Positions 4,499 to 63,263 of a DNA stretch of 64,000 nucleotides are shown piece after piece. Within the stretch, counting starts at the first letter, position 1, and every line of letters begins with the position of its first letter. The notes beneath the pieces are model-generated. The model made no database searches, was not told the DNA's origin, and worked only from the letters and a program-made list of their open reading frames with translations. The stretch lies in the IMG/VR virus record IMGVR_UViG_3300042541_001760, positions 1-64,000 of that record; one strand, written 5' to 3'. The position numbers and the translations under genes were made by a program.

Positions 4499-4594
4499 AC
4501 CGATAAATACAATTCATTTTAAAATAAATATAAGGTGATAAGATATATTTTAAACAACTTTTTGTATTTACTTTATTTTATTTTTTTGTGATCA

Positions 4595-4810
4595 TTATAT
4601 AACTAGATTATAATAACAATTACTATTAATAATACTTAATGAATAGGTTCCATATATATCTTTATTAATAGAACTAGAATCAAAAGTATAAGGTAATAAC
4701 TGGGTTCCCAGACCAAAAGATTCATTACTCCCGGTTGGAGTAAACATAATATTCGCCTGTTCTCCGCTAAAATTTACACTGCTTATTATAACTGTTTGTG
4801 GCATTATCAC
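4595..4810 (-). CDS. Small hypothetical (probable virion accessory) protein
   Basis: 71-aa ORF co-oriented between structural-type genes; beta-strand-like composition. Confidence 0.65.
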   Translation of the reverse strand: MIMPQTVIISSVNFSGEQANIMFTPTGSNESFGLGTQLLPYTFDSSSINKDIYGTYSLSIINSNCYYNLVI

Positions 4811-4834
4811 TTTTTTCTTAATAAAGTTGATGTT

Positions 4835-6118
4835 TTAGTTAAATATTTGGTTTTTGGTTTTAGTTGGTGTTCTTGTTGGTGTTAGTGTTGGTGTTCTTGT
4901 TACAGGTGGGGTTTTACGAGGCGTTCTAGTTTGTGTTGGTGAATTTGTCGGAGTTGGTGTTGGGCATGAACATACATTATTAATATATGCGGTGGCACCA
5001 CATGCACTTGAGATAATACTAACGTTTAAAGCACAGACACTATCCGTCATAAATTTCTTTAGTGTACGTGTGGTTGTAATCCCAAAACAATCTGTTACAG
5101 AAAAATATGAGAAATCACAAAGCATACCCCCATAAAGATTCCAATTTGAGCAACATTTTGCTGGTGTTGGGGTTGGTGTTCTTGTTGGGGTTGGTGTTCT
5201 TGTTACAGGTGGGGTTTTACGAGGTGTTCTAGTTGGTGTAGGAGTAGGTAATGTAGTTTTTGTTGGGGTTGGTGAACTAGACTTACTGATACTAGGAGTT
5301 ACTGTAATAGTCGGTGTTACTGTTACAGGTGGGGTTTTACGAGGTGTTCTAGTTTGTGTTCTAGTTGGTGTTACTGTTCTAGTTGGTGTTACCGTTTTAG
5401 TTGGAGTTACTGTTGATGTTCTAGTTGGTGTTACCGTTTTAGTCGGAGTTACTGTTGATGTTCTAGTTGGTGTTACTGTTCTAGTTGGTGTTACTGTTCT
5501 AGTTGGTGTTGGGGTTGAACTAACGCAAGGTATTTGAACTAATGATGTTGAGAATCCGGAATCATCCGTTATACAACTAACCGCTCCACTGAAATTAATC
5601 CATTGAGATTCATCACCAATAGGTAATGTCGTATCTAAAGGTAATGTAGACCCTGTTAGACCTAAATTGATATAATATACCACCCACTCAATCCCATTCC
5701 AATAAATAGAATAATTTTTTGAATTAGGGTATACGAAAGTGAATGATCTTTTTCCGTTTATAATTGAGCCTTCAGTTGGTGACACAACCCCACATTCAGA
5801 TGAAACCGAAAAATATTCGCAAAAGTAACCACTAGTTGAGGTTAGTGTTGGTGTATTGGTTATGGTCGGAGTTACTGATGGGGTTGGTGTTGCACCTGTT
5901 ATACAACTTTCGCACTGACCACTCATGTACTCAGGAGTAATAAAATTAGTAACACCACTTGATGTTCCTGTAAAAGATTCTAAATAATAACATGTTGTAC
6001 CACTACCATTATTATAGGACACTATGTCTCCAATTGAAAAAGCAGATAAAATTATATTAAAATTTATATCGTTAGTTGATGTTAGACAGTCGGTAAATAA
6101 TGAAGCGGTGTAAGACAT
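4835..6118 (-). CDS. Thr/Pro-rich mucin-like protein with Cys-rich modules
   Basis: 427 aa; TPTRTV and RTPRKTPPVT repeats; CxxC and CC motifs; TATTTAT motif upstream. Confidence 0.8.
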   Translation of the reverse strand: MSYTASLFTDCLTSTNDINFNIILSAFSIGDIVSYNNGSGTTCYYLESFTGTSSGVTNFITPEYMSGQCESCITGATPTPSVTPTITNTPTLTSTSGYFCEYFSVSSECGVVSPTEGSIINGKRSFTFVYPNSKNYSIYWNGIEWVVYYINLGLTGSTLPLDTTLPIGDESQWINFSGAVSCITDDSGFSTSLVQIPCVSSTPTPTRTVTPTRTVTPTRTSTVTPTKTVTPTRTSTVTPTKTVTPTRTVTPTRTQTRTPRKTPPVTVTPTITVTPSISKSSSPTPTKTTLPTPTPTRTPRKTPPVTRTPTPTRTPTPTPAKCCSNWNLYGGMLCDFSYFSVTDCFGITTTRTLKKFMTDSVCALNVSIISSACGATAYINNVCSCPTPTPTNSPTQTRTPRKTPPVTRTPTLTPTRTPTKTKNQIFN

Positions 6119-6144
6119 AATTTTTATATTTTATAATATAAATA

Positions 6145-11326: not shown

Positions 11327-11373
11327 TTTTTTATTGATAAATACACGACATTGAAGTATTTATTGATAAAAAA
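11327..11373. promoter_or_regulatory. Divergent late-promoter pair: 18-bp imperfect inverted repeat, each arm carrying TATTTAT
   Basis: TTTTTTATTGATAAATAC-N11-GTATTTATTGATAAAAAA (16/18 match) between divergent starts at 11322(-) and 11377(+). Confidence 0.65.
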
Positions 11374-39771: not shown

Positions 39772-40578
39772 ATGGAAAATTATATAAATCTATCGGTTAT
39801 TTTGCCGATCAAGTCAGCGGCGGTTAAAGATTTTGACGAATTGTTTGAAAAAGCAATTAACTCACTTAAGAATCAAAAATCATTATTTAACGAATTAATT
39901 ATTGTTCACACAGATGAAACTAAATTAGTTGATACTATTAACAGATTTGATTTCGGCGATTTAAATGTTAAGAAACTTTTATGGGATAAAGAACCAAGTT
40001 ACTCTAATCAGATTAATTTTGGTGTTGAGAACTCTTCATCTGAATGGGTTTCATTTTTTGAATTTGATGATGAATATTCAAGTATTTGGTTTAAAAATGT
40101 AAAATTATATTCGGAAGCGTATAAAGATGTTCAGGCTTTCTTACCAATTGTTGTTGATATTGACGATAAAGGGTTGTTCGCAGGATTCACAAATGAAGCA
40201 TCATTCGCGGCTAATTTCTCTAACGAAATTGGTTATCTGAATAACGAAACACTACAAAGTTATCAGAACTTCCAAAGTGCTGGAATGGTTATCAAGAAAA
40301 GTGTATTTGAGGAATATGGTAAATTTAAACCATCAATTAAATTAACTTTCGTATACGAATTCTTACTTAGAATGACTTATAATAATGTTAAGATTATGAC
40401 AATCCCTAGAATTGGTTATAAGCATTTAAATTTACGTGAAGGGTCTATTTTTTGGAACTACAAGAATGGATCTGAGGTTATGTCACCTGATGAGGTAAAG
40501 TTTTGGATTGAGTCTGCTAAGAAAGAATATTTTTTCACTATTGATAGAAACATAAAATATGAACCACAAACAGTTTAA
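39772..40578 (+). CDS. GT2-like glycosyltransferase
   Basis: LSVILPI, NFGVE, SFFEFDDEY and YEFLLRM. Confidence 0.7.
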   Translation: MENYINLSVILPIKSAAVKDFDELFEKAINSLKNQKSLFNELIIVHTDETKLVDTINRFDFGDLNVKKLLWDKEPSYSNQINFGVENSSSEWVSFFEFDDEYSSIWFKNVKLYSEAYKDVQAFLPIVVDIDDKGLFAGFTNEASFAANFSNEIGYLNNETLQSYQNFQSAGMVIKKSVFEEYGKFKPSIKLTFVYEFLLRMTYNNVKIMTIPRIGYKHLNLREGSIFWNYKNGSEVMSPDEVKFWIESAKKEYFFTIDRNIKYEPQTV

Positions 40579-41321
40579 TGACATTAAGTGGTTCCACGGA
40601 TATTGAGGTTAAAAGGAAAGGTAGAAAACCTAAAGCGGATAATTATTTTGATGTAAGGGAAGAGGTTGCGGTAAGATTATTCTTATCCGCAACAACTTCA
40701 GAAGAAAAAAACAAAATATATAATCAAAGTTTAAGGAAACCTCTCGACAAAATGATATCGTCAATAATAAGACGATATAAGTTATATCGGAAAGATATGG
40801 ATTTTATTGAGATCCACGCTGACACGCACTCGTTCTTAATGACCAAAATAGATAAGTTTAAACCATCAAAAGAAAAGAAAGCGTATTCGTATTTTGGTAC
40901 CATATGTAAAAATTATCTTATGGGTCAAATAATAAAAGACCAAAAAGAAACGAACAGAAAAATTTCATACGAGGATATATCATACGATTTGGAAAATAAC
41001 CTTAGACCCGACTTAATATATTATATTGATAATGATTCAATAGACACGGACGATATAATATCCTCTTACATTAGTGAATTACAAAAAATAATACATGAAG
41101 AAGGTTTAAACGAAAATGAGCGTAAATTAGGTGAATCTTTATGTGAAATTTTTGTTAATTACAAATCAATCTTCATAAGTACCGACAATAATAAGTTTAA
41201 TAAGAATATTATATTGTTATCATTAAGAGAAATGACCAACTTATCAACTAAAGAAATAAGGTCATGCATGAAAAAATACAAAAGAGTATATTTTGATTTA
41301 ATTCAAAATATGGTTAAGTAA
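40578..41321 (+). CDS. Divergent sigma factor, T4 gp55-like (candidate late sigma)
   Basis: KIDKFKPSKEKKAYSYFGTICKNYL resembles sigma region 2 of gp55-like proteins. Confidence 0.65.
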   Translation: MTLSGSTDIEVKRKGRKPKADNYFDVREEVAVRLFLSATTSEEKNKIYNQSLRKPLDKMISSIIRRYKLYRKDMDFIEIHADTHSFLMTKIDKFKPSKEKKAYSYFGTICKNYLMGQIIKDQKETNRKISYEDISYDLENNLRPDLIYYIDNDSIDTDDIISSYISELQKIIHEEGLNENERKLGESLCEIFVNYKSIFISTDNNKFNKNIILLSLREMTNLSTKEIRSCMKKYKRVYFDLIQNMVK

Positions 41322-41322: not shown

Positions 41323-41329
41323 TATTTAT
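41323..41329 (+). promoter_or_regulatory. TATTTAT late-promoter-like motif
   Basis: 4 nt upstream of ATG 41334; one of 13 such sites upstream of gene starts. Confidence 0.55.
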
Positions 41330-43607: not shown

Positions 43608-43608
43608 T

Positions 43609-45423: not shown

Positions 45424-45430
45424 TATTTAT
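45424..45430 (+). promoter_or_regulatory. TATTTAT late-promoter-like motif
   Basis: 14 nt upstream of ATG 45445. Confidence 0.55.
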
Positions 45431-45444
45431 TGTAAAATAGAAAA

Positions 45445-47420: not shown

Positions 47421-47476
47421 TACGAAAATAAATAATATTTTTTTGTATTTTTATGATTATCCATATATTTATATGT

Positions 47477-47976: not shown

Positions 47977-47984
47977 TATCTTTG
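47977..47984 (+). promoter_or_regulatory. Possible Bacteroidota-type -7 promoter element
   Basis: TATCTTTG (TAnnTTTG) 19 nt upstream of ATG 48004; no clear -33 TTTG. Confidence 0.4.
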
Positions 47985-49135: not shown

Positions 49136-49193
49136 TTGACTTAATGATTTGTTATTTCTATTTTTATATAAATATCTTAAAAAACGAATTGTT

Positions 49194-49602: not shown

Positions 49603-51441
49603 TTATCTCAATTCTCTCAAATCAAACGTTCTAACTCCATCAACGGTAATTCTAGCATAGAAGCGATTATTTACCATCTTTTTCGCGTATCTTGTCATAA
49701 TCCCTTTAATTGGTGTGAAATTAAATGGGTTATACATAGTTGGAGTTAATTGTAGAGGTACGTACGGTGCGTAGATGTAACCTGTGTCAAGTAACGATGT
49801 ACCTTTGTGACCAATCAACACCTGATTAGCAGGGAAGTAAGGGTCACGGAACACTTGGTAACGACCAGCTAATGTACCAACTCTTTCAATACCCATGTTG
49901 TACTGATCTTGCTCCGGTGAAGCATTTGATACGTGGAAGTATTCTAAGTCATCAAAAATTGCAGAAACTTCAGAAGAAACTACGATCCAATTAGCGCCAC
50001 CTCTTAAAGTTGACTTGTGAATTTGAGCTGACAATTGGTTAATTGCAGTAATCAAAGTCTGATTCCAATCTTTCTGAGTGTATTGAGTTAATGGATTAGA
50101 TGATGTTCCTCTTTTCCAACCGTTGTAATCCCAACGTAGATTCCAAGCCGCTCCTTTACGTAAGTCACGTAAAATTTCACGGTCAATCTCAGCAGCTACT
50201 TGTTCTGACAACAATGCCGTCAATTCAGCCTCAGCGTCGATGTTATGGAAAGCCGCAACGTCTTGAGCTAACTCAGGAGACCATTGTGCTCTTAGTTTTC
50301 TTTCAGTAACAGATACAGTAACAGACTGAAGATCGAAAGAAACTTCTCCAATTTCATCTTCAAATTCTAATGTCTTATATCTTCTGAAAATACATCTAAA
50401 TTGAGTCCCAGTAGCAACAGTACCGGCAACAGTTAAAGTTAAACCTGAGTAACCATCCAAAGATGCTGCTCCAAGCGCGCAAGGAACTTGTAGGTCTACT
50501 TCTAAGTAAATAGTACCGGTTGAATCACATATATCGTAATAAGAACCACCATTTCCTGTTGATGACCAAGTTGTTGATTGTTGTGATCCGTATTGTACGA
50601 TACCTTTACCGTATTTTTGAGTAACAACTCTAAATAGTAAATCACCAGAACCCATACCTGAGAACGCCCCGGTGGATATTGCTTGAACTCTTAAATCTGA
50701 AAGGAACGCTTCACTATCCATTTCCTGACCGTCAGGTCCAATTAATTTACCTTCACCTGCATTAGTGAAACCTGTTAAAACAATTAACGCTTTTCTATAA
50801 ACAGGACCTCCGTCAGCACCAGTTGCGGCAACTTGGCCACCTGTTAAACTGTAAGCGGTAGGTACTAATACTCCATTTGACCAAGCAACTGTAGTGGTAT
50901 CGGTAGTTGTGATTGCCGTGTAAGCTCCTTTAGAGTAATCGAAAAGACCAGGAGGATCCAAAGTCGGTTCATTACCTTCGTAAAATCTGTCATAAAGGTT
51001 TTTGTCGTTAGCTCCATATGCCGCTTGTGATTCCGCAAGTGTTGGTCCGTTTGGTGCTCCTACAGGACCAAAATGTGCATTTTCGTTAGAACCTGCCTCT
51101 TGGTATCCTTGGATTTTAGGTACGAAGTAGAACAATTTACCAATTGGTAAGTTCATTGCTTGTACTGATACGATTTCGTTAGCCAACAATTTAGAGAAAA
51201 CACGTCTTACGATTGGAAAAACAACTGTTTCAAATGCTCCGTTAGAAGATTCTGAAGATGCTTCGTTAATCAAGAAAGATGCTTGGTTTTCATAAAGTTG
51301 TGCAACGTTTTCTTTTAGGTGGCCTTTAAGACCTTCTAGGAACCCTAATTTGTCCCATTTGTTAATTGTATCTTCTTTGATAACCTTAAGGTGCTTAAGA
51401 CCGATGTTACCAACAAGACCTGATTCTAATAATGCTCCCAT
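49603..51441 (-). CDS. gp23: Major capsid protein (T4 gp23-like)
   Basis: FPIVRRVF, VSVQAMNLPIG.LFY, RKLRAQWSPELAQD..AFHNIDAEAEL, YAPYVPL and MTRYA. Confidence 0.95.
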   Translation of the reverse strand: MGALLESGLVGNIGLKHLKVIKEDTINKWDKLGFLEGLKGHLKENVAQLYENQASFLINEASSESSNGAFETVVFPIVRRVFSKLLANEIVSVQAMNLPIGKLFYFVPKIQGYQEAGSNENAHFGPVGAPNGPTLAESQAAYGANDKNLYDRFYEGNEPTLDPPGLFDYSKGAYTAITTTDTTTVAWSNGVLVPTAYSLTGGQVAATGADGGPVYRKALIVLTGFTNAGEGKLIGPDGQEMDSEAFLSDLRVQAISTGAFSGMGSGDLLFRVVTQKYGKGIVQYGSQQSTTWSSTGNGGSYYDICDSTGTIYLEVDLQVPCALGAASLDGYSGLTLTVAGTVATGTQFRCIFRRYKTLEFEDEIGEVSFDLQSVTVSVTERKLRAQWSPELAQDVAAFHNIDAEAELTALLSEQVAAEIDREILRDLRKGAAWNLRWDYNGWKRGTSSNPLTQYTQKDWNQTLITAINQLSAQIHKSTLRGGANWIVVSSEVSAIFDDLEYFHVSNASPEQDQYNMGIERVGTLAGRYQVFRDPYFPANQVLIGHKGTSLLDTGYIYAPYVPLQLTPTMYNPFNFTPIKGIMTRYAKKMVNNRFYARITVDGVRTFDLRELR

Positions 51442-51461: not shown

Positions 51462-52943
51462 TTAGTTTATTTTACTCATCAGATCTTTCATTCTCAAGAA
51501 CTGAGGATTTTCATACGTTTTTGATTCAATCAATGTAGAAGCCGATCCTGATGCAGGTGTTTTTTCGATTCTTGTTTCAATTGATTCTGTAATTGACCCT
51601 TTAGTTTTTGTTGAAAGTTCGTCTTTTATTGTTTTATACAAATTCTTAGATTCTTTTATGGTTTCAACACCGTCAAATCTTCTTAAGATGTTTATTTTTT
51701 CTTGTTTTGAAGTTGAGTGTTCTGTGAACAATCTCGTAGCGTACGCTAGGTTTGAATTAAAAATAGCGACTTCATTAAGTTTATCTCTAAACACATTAAG
51801 AGCCTTACGATATTCTTCGTTCTTTTCTCTTAAAATTTGTACTTGATTAATGTTTCTTTGTTCTTCAATACTGATATTTGATTTGGAATGAGCTCTTGGT
51901 TTTGGTAGACCGCCTTTTCTGAACATTGAACCGTTACCTAATGTACGTGAAGCTTCTTTGGTTTCTTCCTTAGATTTACCTGAAACAAACATAGATGAAG
52001 GTTTCCCTTTGCCCATCATAGCACCTTCTTTGGTTTCTTTCTTCACAGGTTTGTTAAAAATTGTACCTTTAACTTTACCCATTCCAACACCTTTAGTACC
52101 TGTTTTCATAGATTCTTTGAAACCACCTTTAGAAGTTTTGTAAGAGAATTTTGAAGGTTTTCCGATTTTTGCTCCTTTACCAATTTTTGGTTTCATTGAT
52201 TCGTAAATATCTTCATCTTCTTGTTCAGACATTTCTTCTTCATCTTCTTGTTCAGACATTTCTTCTTCGTCAGAATCCATTTCAATTTCATAGACAACTT
52301 CTTCATCGTCTACATCAACTGTTTCACCTTCGTCAAAAACTTTTGATATAATACTATCAATGTCGTCATCATCAGATTCTTCCATTTCTTCGTAAGATTC
52401 ATCCATTTCTTCCTCATCAGATTCGTACATTTCATACTCCTCTTCTTCGGACTCACCCATTTGGATTAGATATTCAGAATCTTTGTTTTCGTCTGTTAGA
52501 TGAATTTGGTCATCGTCTTTTTTAACAATAATACCATCTTTTTCTCCCATCGCCATGAAAACCTTTAATAGGTCATCATCTGAGATACTATCTTCATCTG
52601 ATAGATCGATAACTTCGTCATCCTCCATATCCATATCAGTATCCATTTCCATTTCATCCTCATCAGAGTCAATGTCCATATCCATTTCCATTTCATCCTC
52701 ATCGGAATCCATATCCATATCCATATCCATCTCTTCTTCATCAGAATCCATATCCATGTCAACTTCTGTGTCAATCTCCTCGTCATCATCATCTTGTTCA
52801 GATACGATAGATTCTTTTACTAATTCTTTGATTTCTTGCTTCATTGTAGATGCAAGTATTCCTTTTGCGTTTTGTGAAACTGCCTCTTCCAAATTTCTCA
52901 TTTGTAGAAGAGCGTCTTCAACTAAAGATTTTTCTTTTGCCAT
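51462..52943 (-). CDS. Prohead scaffold/core protein (gp22-like) with D/E/M low-complexity tracts
   Basis: Position between protease and MCP; coiled-coil C-terminus LREKNEEYRKALNVFRDKLNEV; DMDMDMD repeats. Confidence 0.8.
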   Translation of the reverse strand: MAKEKSLVEDALLQMRNLEEAVSQNAKGILASTMKQEIKELVKESIVSEQDDDDEEIDTEVDMDMDSDEEEMDMDMDMDSDEDEMEMDMDIDSDEDEMEMDTDMDMEDDEVIDLSDEDSISDDDLLKVFMAMGEKDGIIVKKDDDQIHLTDENKDSEYLIQMGESEEEEYEMYESDEEEMDESYEEMEESDDDDIDSIISKVFDEGETVDVDDEEVVYEIEMDSDEEEMSEQEDEEEMSEQEDEDIYESMKPKIGKGAKIGKPSKFSYKTSKGGFKESMKTGTKGVGMGKVKGTIFNKPVKKETKEGAMMGKGKPSSMFVSGKSKEETKEASRTLGNGSMFRKGGLPKPRAHSKSNISIEEQRNINQVQILREKNEEYRKALNVFRDKLNEVAIFNSNLAYATRLFTEHSTSKQEKINILRRFDGVETIKESKNLYKTIKDELSTKTKGSITESIETRIEKTPASGSASTLIESKTYENPQFLRMKDLMSKIN

Positions 52944-52961
52944 TAGTGCTAATTTTTCTAT

Positions 52962-52968
52962 ATAAATA
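52962..52968 (-). promoter_or_regulatory. TATTTAT late-promoter-like motif for the scaffold-MCP operon
   Basis: 18 nt upstream of ATG 52943. Confidence 0.6.
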
Positions 52969-53019
52969 TTACCATTTCAGTAAAAATTCGTTTATTATAG
53001 TTAAATCGTAAAAAAAAGC

Positions 53020-53052
53020 AAAAAAAAAAGGAGAACGTTAGTTCCCCCTTTT
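53020..53052 (-). terminator. Rho-independent terminator
   Basis: On the minus strand GGGGAAC-TAAC-GTTCTCC followed by a T9 tract. Confidence 0.75.
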
Positions 53053-53070
53053 AAAATAGTTCATTAAATA

Positions 53071-53280
53071 TTAATCAATAACCTCATCAATTTTACTTTC
53101 TGATATTGAGGTGATTCGCCAATCAAAAGTAAATGTTTCATATCGTTTGGTTACCTTTGCCTCAACATCTGTTGGGTTATACCCATTAATCAATTTTTCT
53201 TCTCTGACCTTTTTAACTTTTCCGGTTTGTTCGTCAGGCATTTCATAAGTGATTTTAGCCACAAAATATTTCTCGTCCAT
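53071..53280 (-). CDS. DUF4494-like protein
   Basis: YFVAKITY...EQTGKVKKVREEKLING...TDVEAKV pattern, recalled as typical of Bacteroidota and their phages. Confidence 0.6.
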   Translation of the reverse strand: MDEKYFVAKITYEMPDEQTGKVKKVREEKLINGYNPTDVEAKVTKRYETFTFDWRITSISESKIDEVID

Positions 53281-53351
53281 AATTATTTTTATTTTTTATA
53301 AATGTCGTCATTAAATTATAATTTGTCAAGTTCTATTGACATTAATAACAA

Positions 53352-54083
53352 TCATCTACCCAAATAATCCGATAATTTTCTCATTAAATCTAATGACTTA
53401 TTTCCTGTTTCACCAACTTGTCTTTCAATAGACATTTTTTTCTCCTCTTCCAAGTTCTCTTCGTATTTCATTCTATCATCAGGGTTTGAGAATAGATATG
53501 CTCCCGGTGTTGATGGTGATGATACTAAGTCAAAACAAATTAATTCAAAGTCGTCCTGAACTTCATTTTGTTCTCCCACTTTTTTAAGTGAACCAACACC
53601 TCTTGAAGATATACCTAATGTAACTCCTTGTCTAAGGTAGTTTGCTGCTAAGTCACCCTTTGATGAACAAACCCCTCTTTCGTGGAATCCTGGTGTTGTT
53701 AGTAATCTTAATTTACCCATTAAAACATTACCCTCCCACCATACTTCAGTAATAAGGTGAGAAACTCTGTCTAAATCTATTAAAGAAGATTCGGGGTGAT
53801 TTAATTCAGATAAAGATGTTCCTTTTTGAATTAATTTTTTATAATTCTCGGCTTCTCTTTTTAATATTTTTTCGGGGTATGATCTACCATTTCTGTTTGG
53901 CGTGTCGTATTTTTGTAATACGGCGTAGAACTCAAAAGGTTTACTATGATCTAGAAAACCTTTTGATTCTTTTAATATATCTTGGTTACCGAACTCTCTT
54001 GGTGATACATAACCTGCGTCATCCTCAATAAGAATACCTTTCTTACCTGATTCGTTACCTTTTAAAATTCTATATTCGCTCAT
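53352..54083 (-). CDS. gp21: Prohead core protease (T4 gp21-like, S77 family)
   Basis: NRNGRSY, SELNHP, DRVSH, GISSRGVGS and FDLVSSPSTPGAY. Confidence 0.92.
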   Translation of the reverse strand: MSEYRILKGNESGKKGILIEDDAGYVSPREFGNQDILKESKGFLDHSKPFEFYAVLQKYDTPNRNGRSYPEKILKREAENYKKLIQKGTSLSELNHPESSLIDLDRVSHLITEVWWEGNVLMGKLRLLTTPGFHERGVCSSKGDLAANYLRQGVTLGISSRGVGSLKKVGEQNEVQDDFELICFDLVSSPSTPGAYLFSNPDDRMKYEENLEEEKKMSIERQVGETGNKSLDLMRKLSDYLGR

Positions 54084-54119
54084 ATGTTATTTTAACAATA
54101 AATACCGCGAACTTTATAT

Positions 54120-54572
54120 TTATGCCTCAACTAATTCAGATTTGTCTTTTTTACTAACGTGAAATTTAAAATACTCATTACCTTTAAACACATCATTGTG
54201 TATTGAGTTCACAATATCTTTAATGGATTTCTTAAGTTCGGGTGATTTAAAATCAATCTCATTTATTAAGAATAAATTTATCTCTAAATTCATAAAAGAC
54301 CTTTTTTTGTATTGTATGCCACTTGTTCTTAGGTCTAAATCAACTATAAAATTCTCATCATATATTTCCCTGTTGATTATTTCATATATTGAGTGTTTTA
54401 CCGCTCTTGACATATTTAGGACGATTCTTGTCCAATTTTCGTAATCATCACTTGGCTCAACCCAAGATTGTATATTAATGTAAAGTGATTTAAGTTCTTT
54501 TGAATCTACTGTCCCGTAATTAATTTTTGATGATTTGTAACCGACTAATTTTGAGGTTTTACCCTTCTTCAT
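54120..54572 (-). CDS. Hypothetical protein
   Basis: 150-aa ORF with its own sigma70-type promoter. Confidence 0.75.
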   Translation of the reverse strand: MKKGKTSKLVGYKSSKINYGTVDSKELKSLYINIQSWVEPSDDYENWTRIVLNMSRAVKHSIYEIINREIYDENFIVDLDLRTSGIQYKKRSFMNLEINLFLINEIDFKSPELKKSIKDIVNSIHNDVFKGNEYFKFHVSKKDKSELVEA

Positions 54573-54605
54573 AATTCCATAATTGATATGTTTATTGTTT
54601 TAGGA

Positions 54606-54634
54606 ATTATAGGTTAATATTATTATTTTGTCAA
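54606..54634 (-). promoter_or_regulatory. Perfect sigma70 consensus promoter
   Basis: TTGACA-N17-TATAAT on the minus strand upstream of ATG 54572. Confidence 0.8.
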
Positions 54635-54638
54635 AAAA

Positions 54639-55367
54639 TTAAAGTTTATCAATTAATGAACGCAATTTAACTAATTCTAACCTATCTGGAGTTTTGATTT
54701 TAATATTGTCTATTGTTTCGTTAATGGTGGTTCTAACCGACTCATCACTCTCATTTACCGTTAATAATGCTAGTTTAACAATAGCGTCATCTCTCAACTC
54801 GTTAAATTTCCTTTCTAATGTTGACTCATCCATTTTTAATAGACCTATAACCTCTTTTTGTTCCGATTCGGTAAGGTTACTAATATATTCCGAATATGAC
54901 TTATTCGCGATACTCAGCATTGAGTTTATTGGTATGTTAATGTTTGTATTATTTTCACAAGAAGGTTCTTTTTGTAAATTTTCTACAACGATTTTTTTGT
55001 TTTTAATTTTATTCTCTAAATTTAAAACGTCATTTGATCTACCCAATAAATTATCAATATGTTCGTATTGATTATCTACTTTTATTTTAGACACCCACCC
55101 CATAATGGATTTAATGTCCTTGTCTTGAACTCTATTAATTATATTCTCATAAAGTGTAATGGATTCAAATACGAATTCTTTTGCGATACTCTCATTCAAA
55201 CCCTTATTAGAACTTAGTTCATCATATAGATAAAATAACTTAGAGATATTTTTATTACTAAGAACCAATTTATTGAATGTTTTTATTTCATTCTTAAATG
55301 TGTTATTACTATATGACTCCAATAATAGAGTTTCAATTTTCGTTTTTAATATACCAAATTTTACCAT
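54639..55367 (-). CDS. Hypothetical head-module protein
   Basis: 242-aa ORF; FGILKTKIETLLLESY leader; TATTTAT upstream. Confidence 0.75.
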   Translation of the reverse strand: MVKFGILKTKIETLLLESYSNNTFKNEIKTFNKLVLSNKNISKLFYLYDELSSNKGLNESIAKEFVFESITLYENIINRVQDKDIKSIMGWVSKIKVDNQYEHIDNLLGRSNDVLNLENKIKNKKIVVENLQKEPSCENNTNINIPINSMLSIANKSYSEYISNLTESEQKEVIGLLKMDESTLERKFNELRDDAIVKLALLTVNESDESVRTTINETIDNIKIKTPDRLELVKLRSLIDKL

Positions 55368-55393
55368 CTCTTTAAATGTTTTTTATATAAATA

Positions 55394-57256
55394 TCAATCA
55401 TTTAACAATCTGTTCAATTCATTCTCCATTTCACCTAAAGAATTCTTTGCCCTAGACAAATTTATATACTCACTTTCAGATACTAAACTACTATTTTCTA
55501 ATAATATATTCGCACTATCTCTATTTGAAGATTCGGGTGTTACTCCCGCTTCTCCACCCGGAGTTGGTCCTGGTGGTGGTGGTGCGATACCTCCACCTTC
55601 TTCTCCACCCATTGGTGGTGGTGGTTCCATTCCTCCCATATCACCACCCATATCTCCGCCAGGTGGTGGAGGTGGTACTGCGGCGGACGCTGAGGTTGTT
55701 CCCGTTTGTTGTCCGTATAATTTATCAATATTATCAAATATACCTGTATGAACAATAATTGTTGGTGTATTTGTAAGTTCGGCCGCGACTGCTTTCTCAA
55801 TTCTTTGTTGTTGTAAATCCAATCTAATCTCTTCGTCAGAGAATCCTAAGATATGTTTCTTAGCCCAAGATTGTGATACAGGGGCGATACCCTCAATTCC
55901 TGCAACCGCATCCTTATATAATAATATCTTCTCTTTCCAAACATCAATTTTTAACAAATCAGCCTGTGTTGATGGATTAGATAATGCTAACGTAAAGTTA
56001 GATAACTCGTCTTCAAAACCTAAAAGAAATAAATGGATAATGGCTATTTTATTCATCTCAGCCAACATACTCTTTTGAATACGATTAATAGTTCTCGCAA
56101 AACGAATATCCATCAATGATAGATTTTTACCATCTCCAACAACCTCCTCAAAACCTAAGAACGCTTTTGGGACTCTCAATGCGGTTAATAGTTTCTTTTG
56201 AATATACTCAATATCGGCGATTTCCGATAAGTTAGTCGCTCCGGGAAGTGTTGTAATAGGGTCAGGAGCGGCAGCATCTCTAACAGGTATGAAGTAATCT
56301 TGGTCAACCGCCATTTGGTTAAATCTCATATCAACATTACCTGTGTTATTATCTACAACTTGAGAACGCTTGAACTTGTTTGCCATACGTTGTACATACG
56401 GTTCAACATCCTTATCATCCATATTACCTACGAATATCTTGAACATTCTTCTTTCGGGGGCTCTTGATGTTCTGTAAATTAACATCGCATCCTCAGACAA
56501 TAATAACTGTTTCCAAATTCTCCTCGCCTTTTCCAACATAGATGTACCATAAGGTAACTTTCTATCATCCCCCAATAATCTAAAGTGGGCAATTTCCCAA
56601 GAATTAAATTCCATATCCTTGGCTTTCCATTTAAATCTCAATCCTGTATTTCTTGGGTCTTGTTCGGTATTTGTAGTTTTTGATGCCATACCCATCTCCA
56701 ATCTTTCAATCTCAATGTTTGGTAACTGCATACAACCAACAACCCCTCTTTCAGTATCCAATTTTAGATAAACAAAATTATCACCATATTTACAAGCATT
56801 TCTTGTCCACATTGGTAAGTTTGTATTAATATCCAAATTGTTATTAAACAAATCCGATAATATTGATTTTATTCTCTGTGATTCAGAATAAATCTGTAAC
56901 ATATCACCATTTTGGTCAACCGTGGTGGATTCCTCACCATAGATATCCAACGCTGCGGATATTTCGGGTGTGTACTCCATAGATTCAAAATCATAGAATG
57001 ATGCTAATCTTGTTGGTTCGTAATATGTTGCTTGGGTATATAAATTATTCTCAATCTTAGTCCATTGATTGGATAAGTAGAATGTTTGTTGAGCTTGGAG
57101 TTTTTCCTTCTCGTATTGTTGTTTACTGTTTGTTTTTAGTAATTCTGTCTTATCGTATTTGTAGGTCGGATAATCTTGACCTAATAATGAGTAAGGACCG
57201 AAGGCTTGGGTTAATCTTTGCCAAACGGTCAAATTTTGATTATTGTTATTTTCCAT
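55394..57256 (-). CDS. gp20: Portal protein (T4 gp20-like) with Pro/Gly/Met-rich tail
   Basis: PEISAALD, LLSEDAMLIYRTSRAPERR.F.IFVGN, QDYFIP, TLPGATNL.EI.DIEY...LRVP. Confidence 0.93.
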   Translation of the reverse strand: MENNNNQNLTVWQRLTQAFGPYSLLGQDYPTYKYDKTELLKTNSKQQYEKEKLQAQQTFYLSNQWTKIENNLYTQATYYEPTRLASFYDFESMEYTPEISAALDIYGEESTTVDQNGDMLQIYSESQRIKSILSDLFNNNLDINTNLPMWTRNACKYGDNFVYLKLDTERGVVGCMQLPNIEIERLEMGMASKTTNTEQDPRNTGLRFKWKAKDMEFNSWEIAHFRLLGDDRKLPYGTSMLEKARRIWKQLLLSEDAMLIYRTSRAPERRMFKIFVGNMDDKDVEPYVQRMANKFKRSQVVDNNTGNVDMRFNQMAVDQDYFIPVRDAAAPDPITTLPGATNLSEIADIEYIQKKLLTALRVPKAFLGFEEVVGDGKNLSLMDIRFARTINRIQKSMLAEMNKIAIIHLFLLGFEDELSNFTLALSNPSTQADLLKIDVWKEKILLYKDAVAGIEGIAPVSQSWAKKHILGFSDEEIRLDLQQQRIEKAVAAELTNTPTIIVHTGIFDNIDKLYGQQTGTTSASAAVPPPPPGGDMGGDMGGMEPPPPMGGEEGGGIAPPPPGPTPGGEAGVTPESSNRDSANILLENSSLVSESEYINLSRAKNSLGEMENELNRLLND

Positions 57257-57319
57257 ATAATAAATTTAACTATATCCATAAATAGTTAAACACTAGTATT
57301 TTGGATATTTCGATAAATA

Positions 57320-59092
57320 TCATCGTTTGTTACCAAATAACCAACCATAGTCAATATAGTCCTGTCTTGATGCTCCTTGTTGTCTTGGGTCTTGGTATCT
57401 TTGTTGTATATTGGGCGATCCAGGATTAAACGAAATTGACTTGGCTGGAGACTCATCAACGTTAACCGTCCAAGATTCCAACATCGCTTTTGTATGTTCT
57501 GTAACCTTTCCTAATTGACTAAATGAAGATTCACCAACATAAATTGCCATCGCAATGGACATAAGTAAATCATCGTGTTGACCCTTTTGATGATCAGGTC
57601 TACCACTAATATAAACAAAAGTATTCATCTCGTTTAATAGACGATTACTATGAATAATAAAATTATGTCTTACCGCCTCCTCAAACGCCGCAATTATCTG
57701 AACTCTCTTATTATTGAAGTTAATACCCGGTATCTTCTCATTTTGCTTTGGGTCGTATTTCCATTTGTTTTGATAATCAACACCATCAACATATAAATCC
57801 CTATAACCCAACTCCTGCATTTTTCTAGACGTAGATACTCCCATTCCTCCTGTTATATCAACAACAACAAAACAAGAATACATATTAGCCCATTTAAAGG
57901 CAATATCCGCCATAATGTCTGGTGGTACCTTACCAACATATTCGGCAACTTGTTCTCTCTCATCAAAATCTATAATTTGGAATGTTGAGTAATCCTCACT
58001 ATCTCCTCTTGATACGTCAACCCCCATAATGTATTTGTGACCAATTACAGGTTCTTTCCATATCCATAAAGAGTTTGCCATCATCTTATTTGTCGGCTCT
58101 GAAATGGTATTTTCACGAATCTTGGTAAGTGTCTTTGAATCAAACACGTTATCACCAGATCCAAGGAAGTTACACTCCAATTCCTGAGAAACTTTTCTCT
58201 TGTCGTATTTTAACTTCTTTACCATTCCCTCAAACCAAGAAGAACAAGGTTTAAATCCGTCTTTAAAATAAGGTTTTAGTTTTTCGTGGTCACCACTATT
58301 TGGGTGATAATGTTCTATTTTTACTACTGCATCTGATGGGTATTGTTCCTTATTTAACAAATAGTGAATAATATCATCCGTTTTAACCAAGAACATATCT
58401 TTGGTATATCTTGGATCTCTATACCAAAACATTTCAGATATTTTAAAATCATTAAACCCTCTTAACGCCTGGTCATAGATTTCGTAATAAATGGGGTCAT
58501 ACCCGTTTGGTGTTGAAATTACAATAACTTTACCACCCGTAGATAGTGAAGCCATACAGGCTGACCAGAAATCCGCATCCGCTTCAATGTAAGCAGCCTC
58601 ATCAAATATTAGTATTGTTGGTGTATAACCACGTAAAGCATCCTTAGATGTTGCTACCGCCTTTACTTCACAACCATTTGTTAATTTGTAATGTCTTTGT
58701 GAGTTCTTTTCTTTAGCAAATCCAATATCAACCCAAGACGGCCATTGTTCAATAAACCCTCTGACTTTATTAGCCATCTCTTGGGCGGTATCCAATTTAT
58801 TGGCGATAATTAGAATCTTCTCAGGTGTTTGTTTTTTCGCGAAGGCTATTTTCTTAGACGCCCAAGCGGCGGTTACGGTGGATACGCCCGCCTGTCTATA
58901 CTTTAGGGCGATATTCTCGTTATTATTCTCATAATCGTCAAGTAAGGATATTTGGTCGGGAAACAATTCTAAAGGAACAAATCTAGATACCGTATTATCA
59001 TACGTCTGTAAATACGTTTTAAGTGCATAAGGGGTATCCCTCATACACTTAACATATTCTATTAAAACTTGTTCCTTTGTTATATTTTGCAT
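57320..59092 (-). CDS. gp17: Terminase large subunit (T4 gp17-like)
   Basis: KYRQAGVST, ILIFDEAA, ISTPNG, QELEC.FLGS, GVDVSRG and HDDLLM. Confidence 0.93.
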   Translation of the reverse strand: MQNITKEQVLIEYVKCMRDTPYALKTYLQTYDNTVSRFVPLELFPDQISLLDDYENNNENIALKYRQAGVSTVTAAWASKKIAFAKKQTPEKILIIANKLDTAQEMANKVRGFIEQWPSWVDIGFAKEKNSQRHYKLTNGCEVKAVATSKDALRGYTPTILIFDEAAYIEADADFWSACMASLSTGGKVIVISTPNGYDPIYYEIYDQALRGFNDFKISEMFWYRDPRYTKDMFLVKTDDIIHYLLNKEQYPSDAVVKIEHYHPNSGDHEKLKPYFKDGFKPCSSWFEGMVKKLKYDKRKVSQELECNFLGSGDNVFDSKTLTKIRENTISEPTNKMMANSLWIWKEPVIGHKYIMGVDVSRGDSEDYSTFQIIDFDEREQVAEYVGKVPPDIMADIAFKWANMYSCFVVVDITGGMGVSTSRKMQELGYRDLYVDGVDYQNKWKYDPKQNEKIPGINFNNKRVQIIAAFEEAVRHNFIIHSNRLLNEMNTFVYISGRPDHQKGQHDDLLMSIAMAIYVGESSFSQLGKVTEHTKAMLESWTVNVDESPAKSISFNPGSPNIQQRYQDPRQQGASRQDYIDYGWLFGNKR

Positions 59093-61158: not shown

Positions 61159-61558
61159 AAACTACTTTTTTTTCAAATTCTAAAACTATATCTCTTTCAT
61201 ATAGTTTTTCTTTTATTGTTTTTTCATCCTCACCAAATCTAAAAACCAATCTTTTTTCAGTTTCAAAATTGGTATCAGAATCTTCGGATTCCCAACCCAA
61301 CGCAATTACATCATCAAGAGAATCTATCATAGAAAAAAAGTCAGAATCCTGAATTAGGGATAACTTAATATCCACACTTTTTAGAGTTCCGACTTTCTGT
61401 ATAAATTCTATATCGGGAGCGGATGGATTACCGTTAGACGGTTTTGACTCCCATCCCTCTCCCCATATATCGGTTATTGTATCTGAAAAGATAAATTCAT
61501 ATATATTATCACCTTTATAATTAGGTCCTAAACCATTTATATAAATTAGATAACTCAT
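61148..61558 (-). CDS. Hypothetical protein
   Basis: 136-aa ORF. Confidence 0.75.
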   Translation of the reverse strand: MSYLIYINGLGPNYKGDNIYEFIFSDTITDIWGEGWESKPSNGNPSAPDIEFIQKVGTLKSVDIKLSLIQDSDFFSMIDSLDDVIALGWESEDSDTNFETEKRLVFRFGEDEKTIKEKLYERDIVLEFEKKVVYEN

Positions 61559-62982
61559 AGAATCGCTCCGTCAGGTGTGATTTTAAATTGTTTACCATTA
61601 ACCTCAAAAACCAAATTTCTCTTATTAGTTTTACCGATTAATTCGGCTTTAGAATATCTTGTTATAAATTTCTCAGAAGTTACTTCTTGGTCAATTGATT
61701 CTGACAATCTCTTAACTTCTTTCATTTGTTTAACCTTATGAGTTTTTTTCTCAACAAATTTTCTAACTCCTCTTTCTTCGTTTAATCTTTTTTCGTTAGG
61801 TGATTCTTGAAAATATTTTGATAAAATCTTATCAACTTTTGATTCTGAGAAAATTTCATCAAAAATTTTACCCATTCCATCAGCGTGATTATCTTCTAAC
61901 ATATCACCCATTTTACTTTTAATGAGTTCGCTATGTTTATTAGTAACTGCTTTGTTAAAGTCCATTTCCTCCATTGGGGATTTTGGGTGTCTTCTTCTTT
62001 TAGGTTCATCACTAAATCCTAAATCATAATCTCCGTCCATAGTTCCTTCCCATTCTTCGGACATTTCACCTTCAGGTAATTCTTCATCGCCCATTTCAGG
62101 TTCTTCCGGCATATCCATACCCGCATCATCCATTTCAGGTTCTTCCGGTATATCCATATCCTCATCACCCATATCTTCATTATCCTCAAATCTGGTCATA
62201 ATCTCCTCAACATCCTCATCGGATAATTGACTTAAATCAAGAGCTGACAATATTGAGTTAATAACATATTTTGTGTCATCAGATGAAATTGGTTCTTCAC
62301 CTTGATTAAGTTTTCTAATTTTTTGACCTAACTTACCTGTTAGTTTTTGGATTGATTTAAAGGTAACCATACCTTCTTCACCTTCAGGTTCTCCGCCCAT
62401 ATCCATTCCTTCGTCACCCATATCCATACCTTCATCACCCATTTCAGGATCTTCCGGCATACCCATTCCTTCATCACCCATAGATGGGTCTTCAGGCATA
62501 TCCATACCTGCGTCAGGCATAGGTGGCATATCAGTTGGTGCGGGTACGGGAGCTGGTGCGGGGGCAGGTGCTGGCATCGGCGGTGCTTCTACAGGTGCGG
62601 GTTTAGGAGTTTTTAATGTGAATTTTTTTTGTTCACCAAATAATGAAATATTTTCTTCATTACCAACCAAAGTATTAACTTCTTTTGTAATTAAGTTTAA
62701 TCTCTTTAATGCTTGGGAATAAGAAGGGTAATACTTTCTATTCTGCATTGGTTCAAGATAATCCATATCGGATTCATTAATTGATTTTTTAATGACATAT
62801 CCGTTCTTATCTCTTTCAATTTTGTATGTATTACCATCGGCTAACATTATTCCATATTCCGTGGATCTTACTTCATTAACAGGATTTGGAATGTTTTCCT
62901 TATAACGAGAAATTTCAATGATACGGTTTATTTTTTCCATACCTTCTAATCTTTCACTTCCTATTGGTTTTAATTTTCCCAT
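61555..62982 (-). CDS. Acidic low-complexity protein (probable prohead core/internal)
   Basis: PAPAPAP linker; repeated DMPEEPEMGDE/MGDEGMD units. Confidence 0.75.
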   Translation of the reverse strand: MGKLKPIGSERLEGMEKINRIIEISRYKENIPNPVNEVRSTEYGIMLADGNTYKIERDKNGYVIKKSINESDMDYLEPMQNRKYYPSYSQALKRLNLITKEVNTLVGNEENISLFGEQKKFTLKTPKPAPVEAPPMPAPAPAPAPVPAPTDMPPMPDAGMDMPEDPSMGDEGMGMPEDPEMGDEGMDMGDEGMDMGGEPEGEEGMVTFKSIQKLTGKLGQKIRKLNQGEEPISSDDTKYVINSILSALDLSQLSDEDVEEIMTRFEDNEDMGDEDMDIPEEPEMDDAGMDMPEEPEMGDEELPEGEMSEEWEGTMDGDYDLGFSDEPKRRRHPKSPMEEMDFNKAVTNKHSELIKSKMGDMLEDNHADGMGKIFDEIFSESKVDKILSKYFQESPNEKRLNEERGVRKFVEKKTHKVKQMKEVKRLSESIDQEVTSEKFITRYSKAELIGKTNKRNLVFEVNGKQFKITPDGAIL

Positions 62983-62999
62983 TTTATTTTTTTTTATAT

Positions 63000-63188
63000 T
63001 TAATTGTTTAATCCGTTAAATCCCCCAAGAGTAACCGCACTACATTGATTAATAGTACCACCAGTAACGTTTGAGTATACGGGTGTTGGTGTACCAAAGG
63101 TAACTACAGAACCTACGGTATTTCCGGAAGCTGCAACATATCCGGTTATTCTTGTTGTGTAATATGAGGTACAGGCAGTTGTTGGCAT
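63000..63188 (-). CDS. Small Thr/Gly-rich probable virion protein
   Basis: 62-aa ORF; TATTTAT 17 nt upstream. Confidence 0.7.
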   Translation of the reverse strand: MPTTACTSYYTTRITGYVAASGNTVGSVVTFGTPTPVYSNVTGGTINQCSAVTLGGFNGLNN

Positions 63189-63263
63189 ATCTTTATTTTT
63201 TCTTTATAAATATATCAATATTAATAATAGTTTATGTGTAATTAATATTATTATCAAAATGAT

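What the first reader, a model, noticed from the sequence alone, without database searches (positions are those of the whole stretch)
4503..63212. Genome-wide late-promoter motif TATTTAT, the reverse complement of the T4 late promoter core
TATTTAT lies on the sense strand 4-32 nt upstream of at least 13 starts, nearly all structural-type: 4503-4509(-), 6138-6144(-), 11337-11343(-), 11357-11363(+), 41323-41329(+), 45424-45430(+), 47466-47472(+), 49168-49174(-), 52962-52968(-), 54098-54104(-), 55387-55393(-), 57278-57284(-) and 63206-63212(-). I did not see it at glycan-island starts. Established: T4 gp55 recognises TATAAATA on the non-template strand. Here the same core points the other way, although the head module is T4-like. 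The gp55-like gene at 40578..41321 is the obvious cognate sigma.
Basis: partly seen in the sequence, partly recalled or inferred. Interest (0 to 1): 0.6.

Follow-up and report, generated by a model that had tools for sequence, protein, structure and literature searches.

The report
Phage-specific promoter motif TATTTAT(A)
A strictly conserved 7-8 base signal, TATTTAT(A), sits just upstream of about a hundred genes of this 261-kb freshwater phage and of its cultured relatives, and is most likely the promoter read by a phage-encoded sigma factor distantly related to T4 gp55; it is a re-tuned version of the T4 late promoter, not a reversed one.

Summary
All 13 sites exist. TATTTAT is not over-represented in the window as a whole, but it is strongly placed: genome-wide, 97 of 273 copies lie on the sense strand within 35 nt of a start (baseline 2.5%), and 93 genes carry it against 18.8±4.1 in shuffles. 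Inside genes it is depleted two-fold on the sense strand. It has no -35 partner, an A-rich start region 5-7 nt downstream, and two spacings to ATG: 4-6 nt (leaderless) and 13-19 nt. It heads 37 of 70 divergent gene starts.

The motif is conserved in 80 metagenomic relatives, in Flavobacterium phage immuto and in Microcystis phage Mel-JY01. All of these carry a homologue of the window's 247-aa protein (40578-41321). That protein has a sigma region-2 fold (Z 10.2 to T4 gp55). The two cultured relatives lack the genome's second, RpoD-like sigma.

A separate class of host-type Bacteroidota promoters (TAnnTTTG) marks early genes.

"Reverse complement of T4" is a coincidence of a near-palindrome. 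In the same orientation the motif matches TATAAATA at 6 of 8 positions and keeps the adenines at -12 and -8.

"Late only" is not shown: a helicase-RNR operon, lysins and many small genes also carry it.

The parts
4503..4509 (-). TATTTAT, 4 nt before ATG 4498 of the 1499-aa ORF (leaderless spacing); a second copy lies at 4524-4530(-)
6138..6144 (-). TATTTAT, 19 nt before ATG 6118 (427-aa ORF)
11337..11343 (-). TATTTAT, 14 nt before ATG 11322 (1725-aa ORF); one half of a divergent promoter pair
11357..11363 (+). TATTTAT, 13 nt before ATG 11377; other half of the divergent pair, heading the long + strand block
40578..41321 (+). 247-aa divergent sigma factor: N-terminal sigma region-2 domain most like T4 gp55, plus a C-terminal helical domain. 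Proposed reader of the motif
41323..41329 (+). TATTTAT immediately after the sigma gene's stop, 4 nt before ATG 41334. A TATTTAT also lies directly after the sigma gene's stop in immuto and Mel-JY01
45424..45430 (+). TATTTAT, 14 nt before ATG 45445 (496-aa ORF)
47466..47472 (+). TATTTAT, 4 nt before ATG 47477, the probable true start of the HNH/endonuclease VII-like gene listed from 47453
49168..49174 (-). TATTTAT, 32 nt before ATG 49135 (241-aa ORF)
52962..52968 (-). TATTTAT, 18 nt before ATG 52943. It heads the 493-aa gene and the major capsid gene (49603-51441). Several metatranscriptome contigs end at 52938-52952, just downstream of it
54098..54104 (-). TATTTAT, 14 nt before ATG 54083 (prohead protease)
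55387..55393 (-). TATTTAT, 19 nt before ATG 55367 (242-aa ORF)
57278..57284 (-). TATTTAT, 21 nt before ATG 57256 (portal). It keeps its position in relatives while the flanks diverge. A second copy lies at 57313-57319(-)
63206..63212 (-). TATTTAT, 17 nt before ATG 63188. It heads the run of genes ending in the large terminase (57320-59092)

Best explanation
TATTTAT(A/T) is the -10-type core of a phage-specific promoter class. Host RNA polymerase core, carrying the phage's own 247-aa sigma (window 40578-41321), melts the DNA at this element and starts at an A about 5-7 nt downstream, with no -35 contact. This sigma is a distant relative of T4 gp55 with an extra C-terminal domain.

About a third of the units place ATG 4-6 nt after the motif, so the mRNA would be leaderless. 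The others have a short A-rich leader without a Shine-Dalgarno sequence, as suits a Bacteroidota host.

Early genes use a different, host-type promoter (TTTG ... TAnnTTTG). The TATTTAT class drives what comes after, including all recognisable virion genes.

Shown:
- the placement, strand bias, specificity and conservation of the motif;
- the lack of a -35 box;
- the existence of the two promoter classes;
- the sigma fold of the 247-aa protein;
- its co-occurrence with the motif across lineages.

Inferred:
- that the motif is a transcription start signal;
- which sigma reads it;
- the position of the start site;
- the timing of expression.
For: Placement and specificity:
- 36% of all copies lie sense-strand within 35 nt of a start, against a 2.5% baseline and 0-12% for one-base variants.
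- 93 genes carry it against 18.8±4.1 in shuffles.
- It is depleted on the sense strand inside genes, 45 against 85.3±9.4.

Anatomy:
- There is no -35 signal. A purine sits just upstream. A makes up 76-83% of the bases at the 5th-7th nt downstream in leadered units, the same place where ATG sits in the 4-6 nt class.
- Many copies directly follow terminator-like hairpins.
- It occurs where a promoter must exist: 37 of 70 divergent gene starts have it in the spacer, and 12 have the host-type box.

Conservation:
- In 80 related loci, 366 of 882 copies are placed the same way.
- Upstream of portal the motif stays fixed while the flanks diverge.
- In Flavobacterium phage immuto's structural module there are 19 copies in 52 upstream regions against 1.2 expected.
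- In Microcystis phage Mel-JY01, ATATTTAT occurs 13 times against 1.0 expected.

The sigma:
- Sigma70_r2 gives 13.7 bits, about what T4 gp55 itself scores at 13.1.
- phrog_234 has its single genome hit here, E 1.2e-3.
- BLASTP to gp55 gives 1e-4.
- gp55 is the top PDB sequence hit, E 0.11.
- VIA-align gives Z 10.2 to gp55, and Z 10.1 at 2.2 Å to sigmaE region 2 bound to -10 DNA.
- Homologues exist in immuto (E 8.5e-18) and Mel-JY01. Neither genome has any Sigma70_r2 or r4 gene.
- No phage multisubunit RNA polymerase was found.

Fit to gp55 chemistry:
- gp55 inserts A-12 (stacking on Y97), A-9 (N13, H95) and A-8 into pockets (PMC7892883).
- TATTTATA keeps A at -12 and -8 and changes -10 and -9.
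- In the alignment Y97 is invariant (Y105 here), while both -9 pocket residues differ: H95 becomes Y or F, and N13 becomes D in this phage.

RNA: contigs from three of four freshwater metatranscriptomes end at 52938-52952, just below the 52962-52968 motif.
Against: - No transcription start has been mapped. The RNA data are assembled contigs, which cannot prove a 5' end, and one contig runs through the motif.
- The gp55 relationship is below family thresholds by sequence. By fold, sigmaE scores as high as gp55.
- The pocket-residue argument rests on a 16-30% identity alignment.
- No gp33 and no T4-type clamp were found, so T4's activation mechanism is not evident.
- How the sigma gene itself is transcribed is unknown. 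No host-type promoter was found just upstream.
- The motif also precedes replication and nucleotide-metabolism genes, so the temporal class is open.
- 24 of 70 divergent starts have neither motif.
Confidence: 0.7

Rival explanations
1. The motif is read by the genome's other sigma, the 266-aa RpoD-like protein at G000 209666-210466(-). This protein is made early and would redirect host polymerase to TATTTAT promoters.
For: It is a complete sigma with regions 1.2, 2 and 4 and matches phrog_351. Its two-gene operon sits behind a host-type TACATTTG box at 211011, so it is plausibly expressed before the TATTTAT class.
Against: Immuto and Mel-JY01 have the motif but no Sigma70_r2 or r4 gene at all. 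TATTTAT sites have no -35 element for region 4 to read. The spacing between the key A and T in the motif matches T4's 8-mer, not the TATAAT hexamer. Two perfect canonical TTGACA-N16/17-TATAAT sites in intergenic spacers look like better targets for this sigma.
Confidence: 0.1
2. The motif acts on RNA, not DNA. It would be a UAUUUAU processing or translation-control site at the head of each cistron, cut or bound after transcription from other promoters.
For: Sense-strand bias, position just upstream of starts, sense-strand depletion inside genes and RNA contig ends near the motif would all fit an RNA-level signal as well.
Against: - It occupies 37 of 70 divergent spacers, where no upstream same-strand transcript is expected.
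- It often follows terminator-like hairpins.
- Its distance to ATG varies between lineages: 4-6 and 13-19 nt here, mostly 13-44 nt in Mel-JY01 with most virion-gene sites at 32-44 nt. The A-rich start region just below it is constant.
- It resembles a gp55-type -10 element, and a matching sigma is conserved with it.
Confidence: 0.07
3. The motif is read by a host sigma (primary or alternative), or it is only AT-rich background upstream of genes.
For: Upstream regions are AT-rich, and the whole-window count equals the shuffled expectation.
Against: - Dinucleotide shuffles of the upstream regions themselves give 18.8±4.1 genes against 93 observed.
- One-base variants are not placed this way.
- The host-type box TAnnTTTG forms a separate class in the same genome, matching published flavobacterial sigmaA promoters (PMC9723704).
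- The same motif serves phages of Flavobacterium and of Microcystis.
Confidence: 0.05

Closest known systems
Phage T4 late promoters (TATAAATA) read by gp55 with gp33 and the gp45 sliding clamp
   Same: Both are a single, nearly invariant AT-rich 8-bp -10-type element with no -35 box. Both sit ahead of virion genes in a phage with T4-type capsid, portal, protease and terminase. The motifs are identical at 6 of 8 positions in the same orientation, including the adenines at -12 and -8 that gp55 inserts into deep pockets. The candidate factor has a gp55-like region-2 domain and keeps the A-12 stacking tyrosine.
   Different: The central AA is TT. The factor is 247 aa with an added C-terminal helical domain and scores below the gp55 family threshold. 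No gp33 and no T4-type clamp were found. The motif is about twice as frequent per genome as I recall for T4 late promoters (own knowledge) and also precedes non-virion genes. About a third of units are spaced for leaderless mRNA.
Bacteroidota primary-sigma promoters (-33 TTTG, -7 TAnnTTTG)
   Same: They are present in the same genome, with the same two spacings to ATG (4-5 nt and about 20 nt) and the same Shine-Dalgarno-free A-rich leaders. The published box lies at -12 to -5.
   Different: The sequence differs, and these promoters have an upstream TTTG partner. They head a different gene set: small ORFs, primase, phosphoesterase, kinase and the RpoD-like sigma. TATTTAT sites do not carry the box.
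ECF-type sigma factors (E. coli sigmaE region 2 bound to its -10 non-template strand)
   Same: Best structural match of the N-terminal domain: Z 10.1, 2.2 Å over 91 residues. The whole-length alignment to sigmaE gives Z 10.3, suggesting a two-domain sigma.
   Different: ECF promoters have a conserved -35 (AAC) and a GC-containing -10 (own knowledge). Here there is no -35 and the core is purely A/T. The sequence is not detectably ECF: no Pfam family passes.
T4-superfamily phages lacking gp33 (Sinorhizobium phage PhiM9 group)
   Same: A T4-type head with a gp55 relative but no gp33, plus an additional canonical sigma gene in the genome (PMC4621102).
   Different: That group carries a recognisable gp55 and an RpoE-type extra sigma. 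Here the gp55 relative is far more divergent and the extra sigma is RpoD-like.

Membership tests
T4-type late transcription system | Specificity factor homologous to gp55 (sigma region-2 domain) | tested here: inconclusive
   By sequence the match is weak. phrog_234 has its single genome hit at 16.1 bits, E 1.2e-3. BLASTP gives 1e-4 over 54 aa. gp55 is the top PDB hit at E 0.11. hhalign probability is only 7.6%. By fold, gp55 scores Z 10.2, tied with sigmaE at 10.3. The sigma region-2 fold is clear; gp55 family membership is not.
T4-type late transcription system | Promoter is one -10-type octamer with no -35 element | tested here: met
   Positions upstream of the motif carry almost no information, and none in the -35 zone; the largest value is 0.26 bits, at a W-rich patch 14-17 nt upstream.
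T4-type late transcription system | Consensus TATAAATA on the non-template strand | tested here: not met
   The sense-strand form is TATTTATA. Of 107 copies of each 8-mer, 56 TATTTATA copies lie near starts against 16 for TATAAATA. The two agree at 6 of 8 positions.
T4-type late transcription system | Co-activator gp33 | tested here: not met
   phrog_254 has no match at E <= 10 in the 261-kb record. Caveats: gp33 is small and fast-evolving, and the record is estimated 89% complete.
T4-type late transcription system | gp45-type sliding clamp as mobile activator | tested here: not met
   phrog_223 has no match at E <= 10, and no family-B DNA polymerase was found. A different clamp type was not searched for.
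T4-type late transcription system | Expression late in infection and dependent on replication | not testable with these tools
   Only assembled metatranscriptome contigs were available. The gene content behind the motif is mixed.
Canonical sigma70 (-35/-10) promoters | TTGACA-like -35 at 16-18 bp from a TATAAT-like hexamer | tested here: not met
   TATTTAT sites have no -35 signal. Canonical sites are not enriched overall, 15 against about 21 in shuffles. Two of the three perfect 12/12 sites stand in intergenic spacers.
Bacteroidota sigmaA promoters | TAnnTTTG box at -12 to -5 with an upstream TTTG | tested here: not met
   The two bases before TATTTAT are not TA. The host-type box forms its own class of sites. 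Only 3 of 70 divergent starts carry both.

The most novel reading that the evidence does not exclude
This lineage of T4-related phages of Bacteroidota and cyanobacteria runs its post-early programme with an unsplit late sigma. One 240-260-aa protein would combine the gp55-like region-2 domain with a region-4-like domain that does the job of gp33. It would work on RNA polymerase cores of two bacterial phyla, need no sliding clamp, and have a re-specified -10 element (TATTTATA) tracked by changes in the -9 pocket residues. In the jumbo member the promoter has multiplied to about 100 copies, a third of them making leaderless mRNAs. This would be a living intermediate between ordinary two-domain sigmas and T4's split gp55/gp33 system.
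Probability: 0.3. Interest if true: 0.7.

Novelty: new variant of a known kind. Interest (0 to 1): 0.55.

Why it matters
- It gives a ready promoter rule for a large, abundant and almost unannotated group of freshwater and marine phages. More than 590 related contigs turned up in one scan, and at least 8000 homologues of the sigma (the search's scoring cap) in another.
- With this rule, post-early transcription units and true start codons can be called from sequence alone. One example is 47477 in place of 47453.
- It offers a natural specificity variant of the gp55 / -10 interaction. Two promoter bases and the residues of the matching pocket differ, and this can be tested directly because a relative, Flavobacterium phage immuto, is in culture.
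- The separate host-type promoter class points to a Bacteroidota host for an uncultured 261-kb phage.

Tried and rejected
- **Whole-window count.** The plain count shows no enrichment. Taken alone, this would have wrongly dismissed the finding.
- **Motif discovery.** A home-made ZOOPS expectation-maximisation run on upstream regions drifted to a generic AT-rich model and was dropped.
- **DNA similarity.** A search of 40000-47000 against phage records found nothing.
- **Family scans of the sigma.** PHROGs and Pfam scans of the 247-aa protein returned no family at default thresholds. tblastn found only Mel-JY01. hhalign against single-sequence gp55 gave a low probability of 7.6%.
- **Foldseek.** E-values were all above 0.02, although nearly every hit was a sigma factor.
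- **Host sigmaA reading.** Rejected because the TAnnTTTG register does not fit.
- **Canonical sigma70 promoters as a large third class.** Not supported overall.
- **Promoter for the sigma gene.** A search for a host-type promoter feeding it found none that was convincing.
- **Annotation.** PHROGs and Pfam scans of about 60 large proteins named only about 20 of them. The split into structural and non-structural genes behind the motif is therefore incomplete.
- **Literature.** Searches for the motif as a phage promoter, for Mel-JY01 and for immuto transcription found nothing relevant.
- **RNA runs.** All RNA runs were held as assembled contigs only, so no true 5' ends could be read.


Full report
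**What the window is**

The window is the first 64 kb of a 261,052-bp, 32% GC virus record, a single contig estimated 89% complete. It carries a T4-type head module: major capsid protein, prohead protease, portal and large terminase. Its nearest named relatives by capsid protein are Microcystis phage Mel-JY01 (42% identity), Flavobacterium phage immuto (40%) and uncultured huge phages. T4 itself is at 25%. No family-B DNA polymerase, T4-type clamp or gp33 was detected. More than 590 related contigs exist in IMG/VR.

**The observation**

All 13 sites are real and lie on the sense strand 4-32 nt before an ATG. The plain count in the window equals expectation: 56 against 59.9±7.6. Placement does not.
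- Genome-wide, TATTTAT is the most enriched 7-mer in the 60 nt before starts: 103 observed, 10.1 expected, reverse complement 44.
- 97 of its 273 copies lie sense-strand within 35 nt of a start, against a 2.5% baseline. No one-base variant exceeds 12%.
- Dinucleotide shuffles of the upstream stretches themselves give 18.8±4.1 genes with the motif against 93 observed. For the window the figures are 2.6±1.6 against 12.
- Inside genes the sense-strand motif is about two-fold depleted against codon shuffles, 45 against 85.3±9.4. The antisense form is barely depleted, 59 against 71.7±8.0.

So the motif is selected for ahead of genes and against within them. This is why the total count looks unremarkable.

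**Anatomy**

Aligned on the motif, the sites show the following.
- There is no -35 element, only a weak W-rich patch 14-17 nt upstream.
- The base just before the motif is a purine in 86% of sites.
- The base just after it is A or T.

Two spacings to ATG stand out.
- **4-6 nt (34 sites of the 97).** The ATG itself sits where a start site would be expected, so the mRNA would be leaderless.
- **13-19 nt (most of the 54 sites of the 97 that lie 11-25 nt from ATG).** The 5th-7th bases after the motif are 76-83% A, followed by an A-rich leader without a Shine-Dalgarno sequence.

Both classes share the same flanks, so they are one promoter type with two kinds of leader. Many copies directly follow hairpin-plus-T-run terminators. 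At the 70 divergent gene starts, where transcription must begin inside the spacer, 37 carry TATTTAT and 12 carry the host-type box.

**A second promoter class, and the host**

Spacers without TATTTAT often carry TTTG ... TAnnTTTG, typically TATCTTTGTAAAAC. This is the published primary-sigma promoter of flavobacteria, with the box at -12 to -5 (PMC9723704). About 25-30 such sites precede small ORFs, the neighbourhood of the tRNA cluster, a primase, a phosphoesterase, a kinase-like ATPase, a peptidase and an RpoD-like sigma gene. Together with the leaders lacking Shine-Dalgarno sequences, this points to a Bacteroidota host. It also marks these sites as the early, host-read promoters. TATTTAT is then the phage-specific class.

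**What reads it**

There is no phage multisubunit RNA polymerase. There are two sigma candidates.

*The 247-aa protein at 40578-41321.*
- It has no family hit at normal thresholds.
- It scores 13.7 bits on Sigma70_r2. T4 gp55 itself scores 13.1.
- It is the only genome hit of the gp55 family profile, E 1.2e-3.
- It aligns to gp55 at E 1e-4, and gp55 is its best PDB sequence match.
- Its AlphaFold model (pLDDT 73.5) finds almost only sigma factors.
- VIA-align gives Z 10.3 to sigmaE, Z 10.2 to gp55 (model residues 22-149 on gp55 10-138), and Z 10.1 at 2.2 Å to sigmaE region 2 bound to -10 DNA.
- Whole-length alignments to two-domain sigmas suggest that residues about 157-246 are a region-4-like domain.
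- It is very conserved: 74-98% identity among the 120 best of at least 8000 metagenomic homologues.

*The 266-aa protein at 209666-210466(-).*
- It is a complete RpoD-like sigma.
- It lies behind a host-type box.

*The phyletic test decides between them.* Immuto's structural module has 19 TATTTAT copies in 52 upstream regions against 1.2 expected. These include copies ahead of terminase, portal, tail sheath, baseplate hub and tape measure. Mel-JY01 has ATATTTAT as its top upstream 8-mer, 13 against 1.0, in the two genome pieces first examined. Genome-wide it has 24 sites within 45 nt of a start, about half of them in its virion-gene regions, and most of its virion-gene sites lie 32-44 nt from the ATG ahead of a GGAG-type ribosome site. 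Both genomes have a homologue of the 247-aa protein (E 8.5e-18 and 4.8e-14). Neither has any Sigma70_r2 or r4 gene. In all three lineages a TATTTAT stands immediately after the sigma gene's stop. The motif therefore travels with the 247-aa sigma across hosts of two phyla and does not need the RpoD-like sigma.

**Relation to T4**

A promoter cannot simply be flipped, and here the sense-strand form is clearly TATTTATA. In the same orientation the two octamers agree at positions 1-3 and 6-8 and differ only at positions 4-5.

The gp55 open-complex structure shows the non-template A at -12 in a deep pocket stacked on Y97. A-9 sits in a shallow pocket formed by N13 and H95, and A-8 sits in a deep pocket (PMC7892883). 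If the octamer occupies -13 to -6 as in T4, TATTTATA keeps A-12 and A-8 and changes -10 and -9.

In the alignments Y97 is the one aromatic residue invariant across T4, this phage, immuto and Mel-JY01 (Y105 here). H95 is Y, F and F in the three TATTTAT lineages. N13 aligns with D25 in this phage. This fits a re-tuned -9/-10 reading, but it rests on a low-identity alignment and is an inference.

**Is it "late"?**

Every recognisable virion gene in the window lies behind a TATTTAT site, as does a baseplate wedge gene elsewhere in the genome. In Mel-JY01 about half the sites lie in virion-gene regions, and most of the sites in immuto's structural module precede virion genes.

In this genome the motif also heads the following:
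- a DnaB-type helicase and ribonucleotide-reductase operon;
- a DNA methyltransferase;
- an FtsH-like protease;
- two lysin-domain proteins;
- an HNH endonuclease;
- many small paralogous ORFs.

Sequence alone supports "post-early, phage-sigma dependent", not "late only".

**RNA evidence**

Four freshwater metatranscriptome runs from four studies hold parts of the head region, but only as assembled contigs. Several contigs over the 51462-52943 gene end at 52938-52952, just below the 52962-52968 motif. One relative's contig runs on through its own TATTTAT. This is compatible with a start there, but contigs cannot prove a 5' end.

**Verdict**

The motif is very probably a promoter core for a phage sigma, and the 40578 protein is the best candidate. 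The "reversed T4 core" idea should be replaced by "T4-type octamer with its two central bases changed". I found no paper describing this motif. I rate it a new variant of a known kind.

Noticed in passing
window 47977-47984(+); 31233-31240(+); genome-wide, e.g. G000 86320(-), 99160(+), 122397(-), 132889(+), 211011(-), 221386(-): There is a second promoter class of Bacteroidota primary-sigma type (TTTG ... TAnnTTTG, often TATCTTTGTAAAAC), with about 25-30 sites. It precedes small ORFs, a primase, a phosphoesterase, a kinase-like ATPase, a peptidase and a sigma gene. It points to a Bacteroidota host and probably marks the early genes.
   Followed up: partly
G000 209666-210466(-), with 210471-210986(-) upstream: This is a complete RpoD-like sigma (regions 1.2, 2 and 4; 33-39% identical to the bacterial-type RpoD sequences matched in the phage collection). 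It sits in a two-gene operon behind a host-type box. Its targets are unknown. It is absent from immuto and Mel-JY01.
   Followed up: partly
window 54606-54634(-); G000 about 256637-256664(-); G000 about 98430-98459(-): Three perfect 12/12 canonical TTGACA-N16-18-TATAAT sites occur. Two stand in intergenic spacers 33-35 nt before an ATG. The class is not enriched overall, but these could be targets of the RpoD-like sigma, since the host's own sigma reads a different box.
   Followed up: partly
genome-wide; window examples 4503, 41323, 47466: 34 of the 97 TATTTAT sites, and several host-type boxes, place ATG 4-6 nt after the element, implying leaderless mRNAs. This is far above the 5.5% reported for Flavobacterium psychrophilum (PMC9723704).
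   Followed up: partly
G000 156744, 157071, 158499, 177283, 189430, 193073 (all -); and 66369, 105464, 139040, 140352, 143466 (all -): Two families of small paralogous genes occur, with products starting MDIQVNK... and MKKVIRLT... Each copy has its own TATTTAT and a nearly identical leader, as if gene and promoter were duplicated together.
   Followed up: no
L036, L038, L047, L062, L075, L080, L083, L093, L094 (upstream of portal): In a subgroup of relatives the portal promoter reads TATTTAA or TATTTAG in place of TATTTAT at the same position. Some of these have an extra exact copy further upstream. This may be a natural weak variant or a shifted specificity.
   Followed up: partly
G000 78390-87350 (L004 14390-18832; L005 948-3350): A cluster of seven tRNA genes (Met x2, Tyr, Cys, Thr, Arg, Glu) lies on the - strand, among host-type promoters.
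   Followed up: no
window 2-4498(-): This 1499-aa ORF is cut by the contig end. It has repeated DUF5122 beta-propeller units and a repetitive T/G-rich opposite strand. It is probably a fibre or adhesin and sits behind a leaderless-spaced TATTTAT.
   Followed up: no
window 12221-40578(+): The glycosyltransferase-rich island has 27-29% GC over most of its length, lower than the rest of the window. Its genes are tightly packed or overlapping, with no TATTTAT at any start. How it and the sigma gene at its end are transcribed is unresolved.
   Followed up: partly
window 52001-58000: Contigs 85-99% identical to this stretch occur in four freshwater or lake metatranscriptome runs from four studies, so relatives of this phage are present, and probably active, in lakes.
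   Followed up: partly
G000 66919-68961(+): A 680-aa ATP-dependent protease (phrog_4871, E 1e-239; FtsH/AAA-like) is encoded by the phage behind a TATTTAT site.
   Followed up: no
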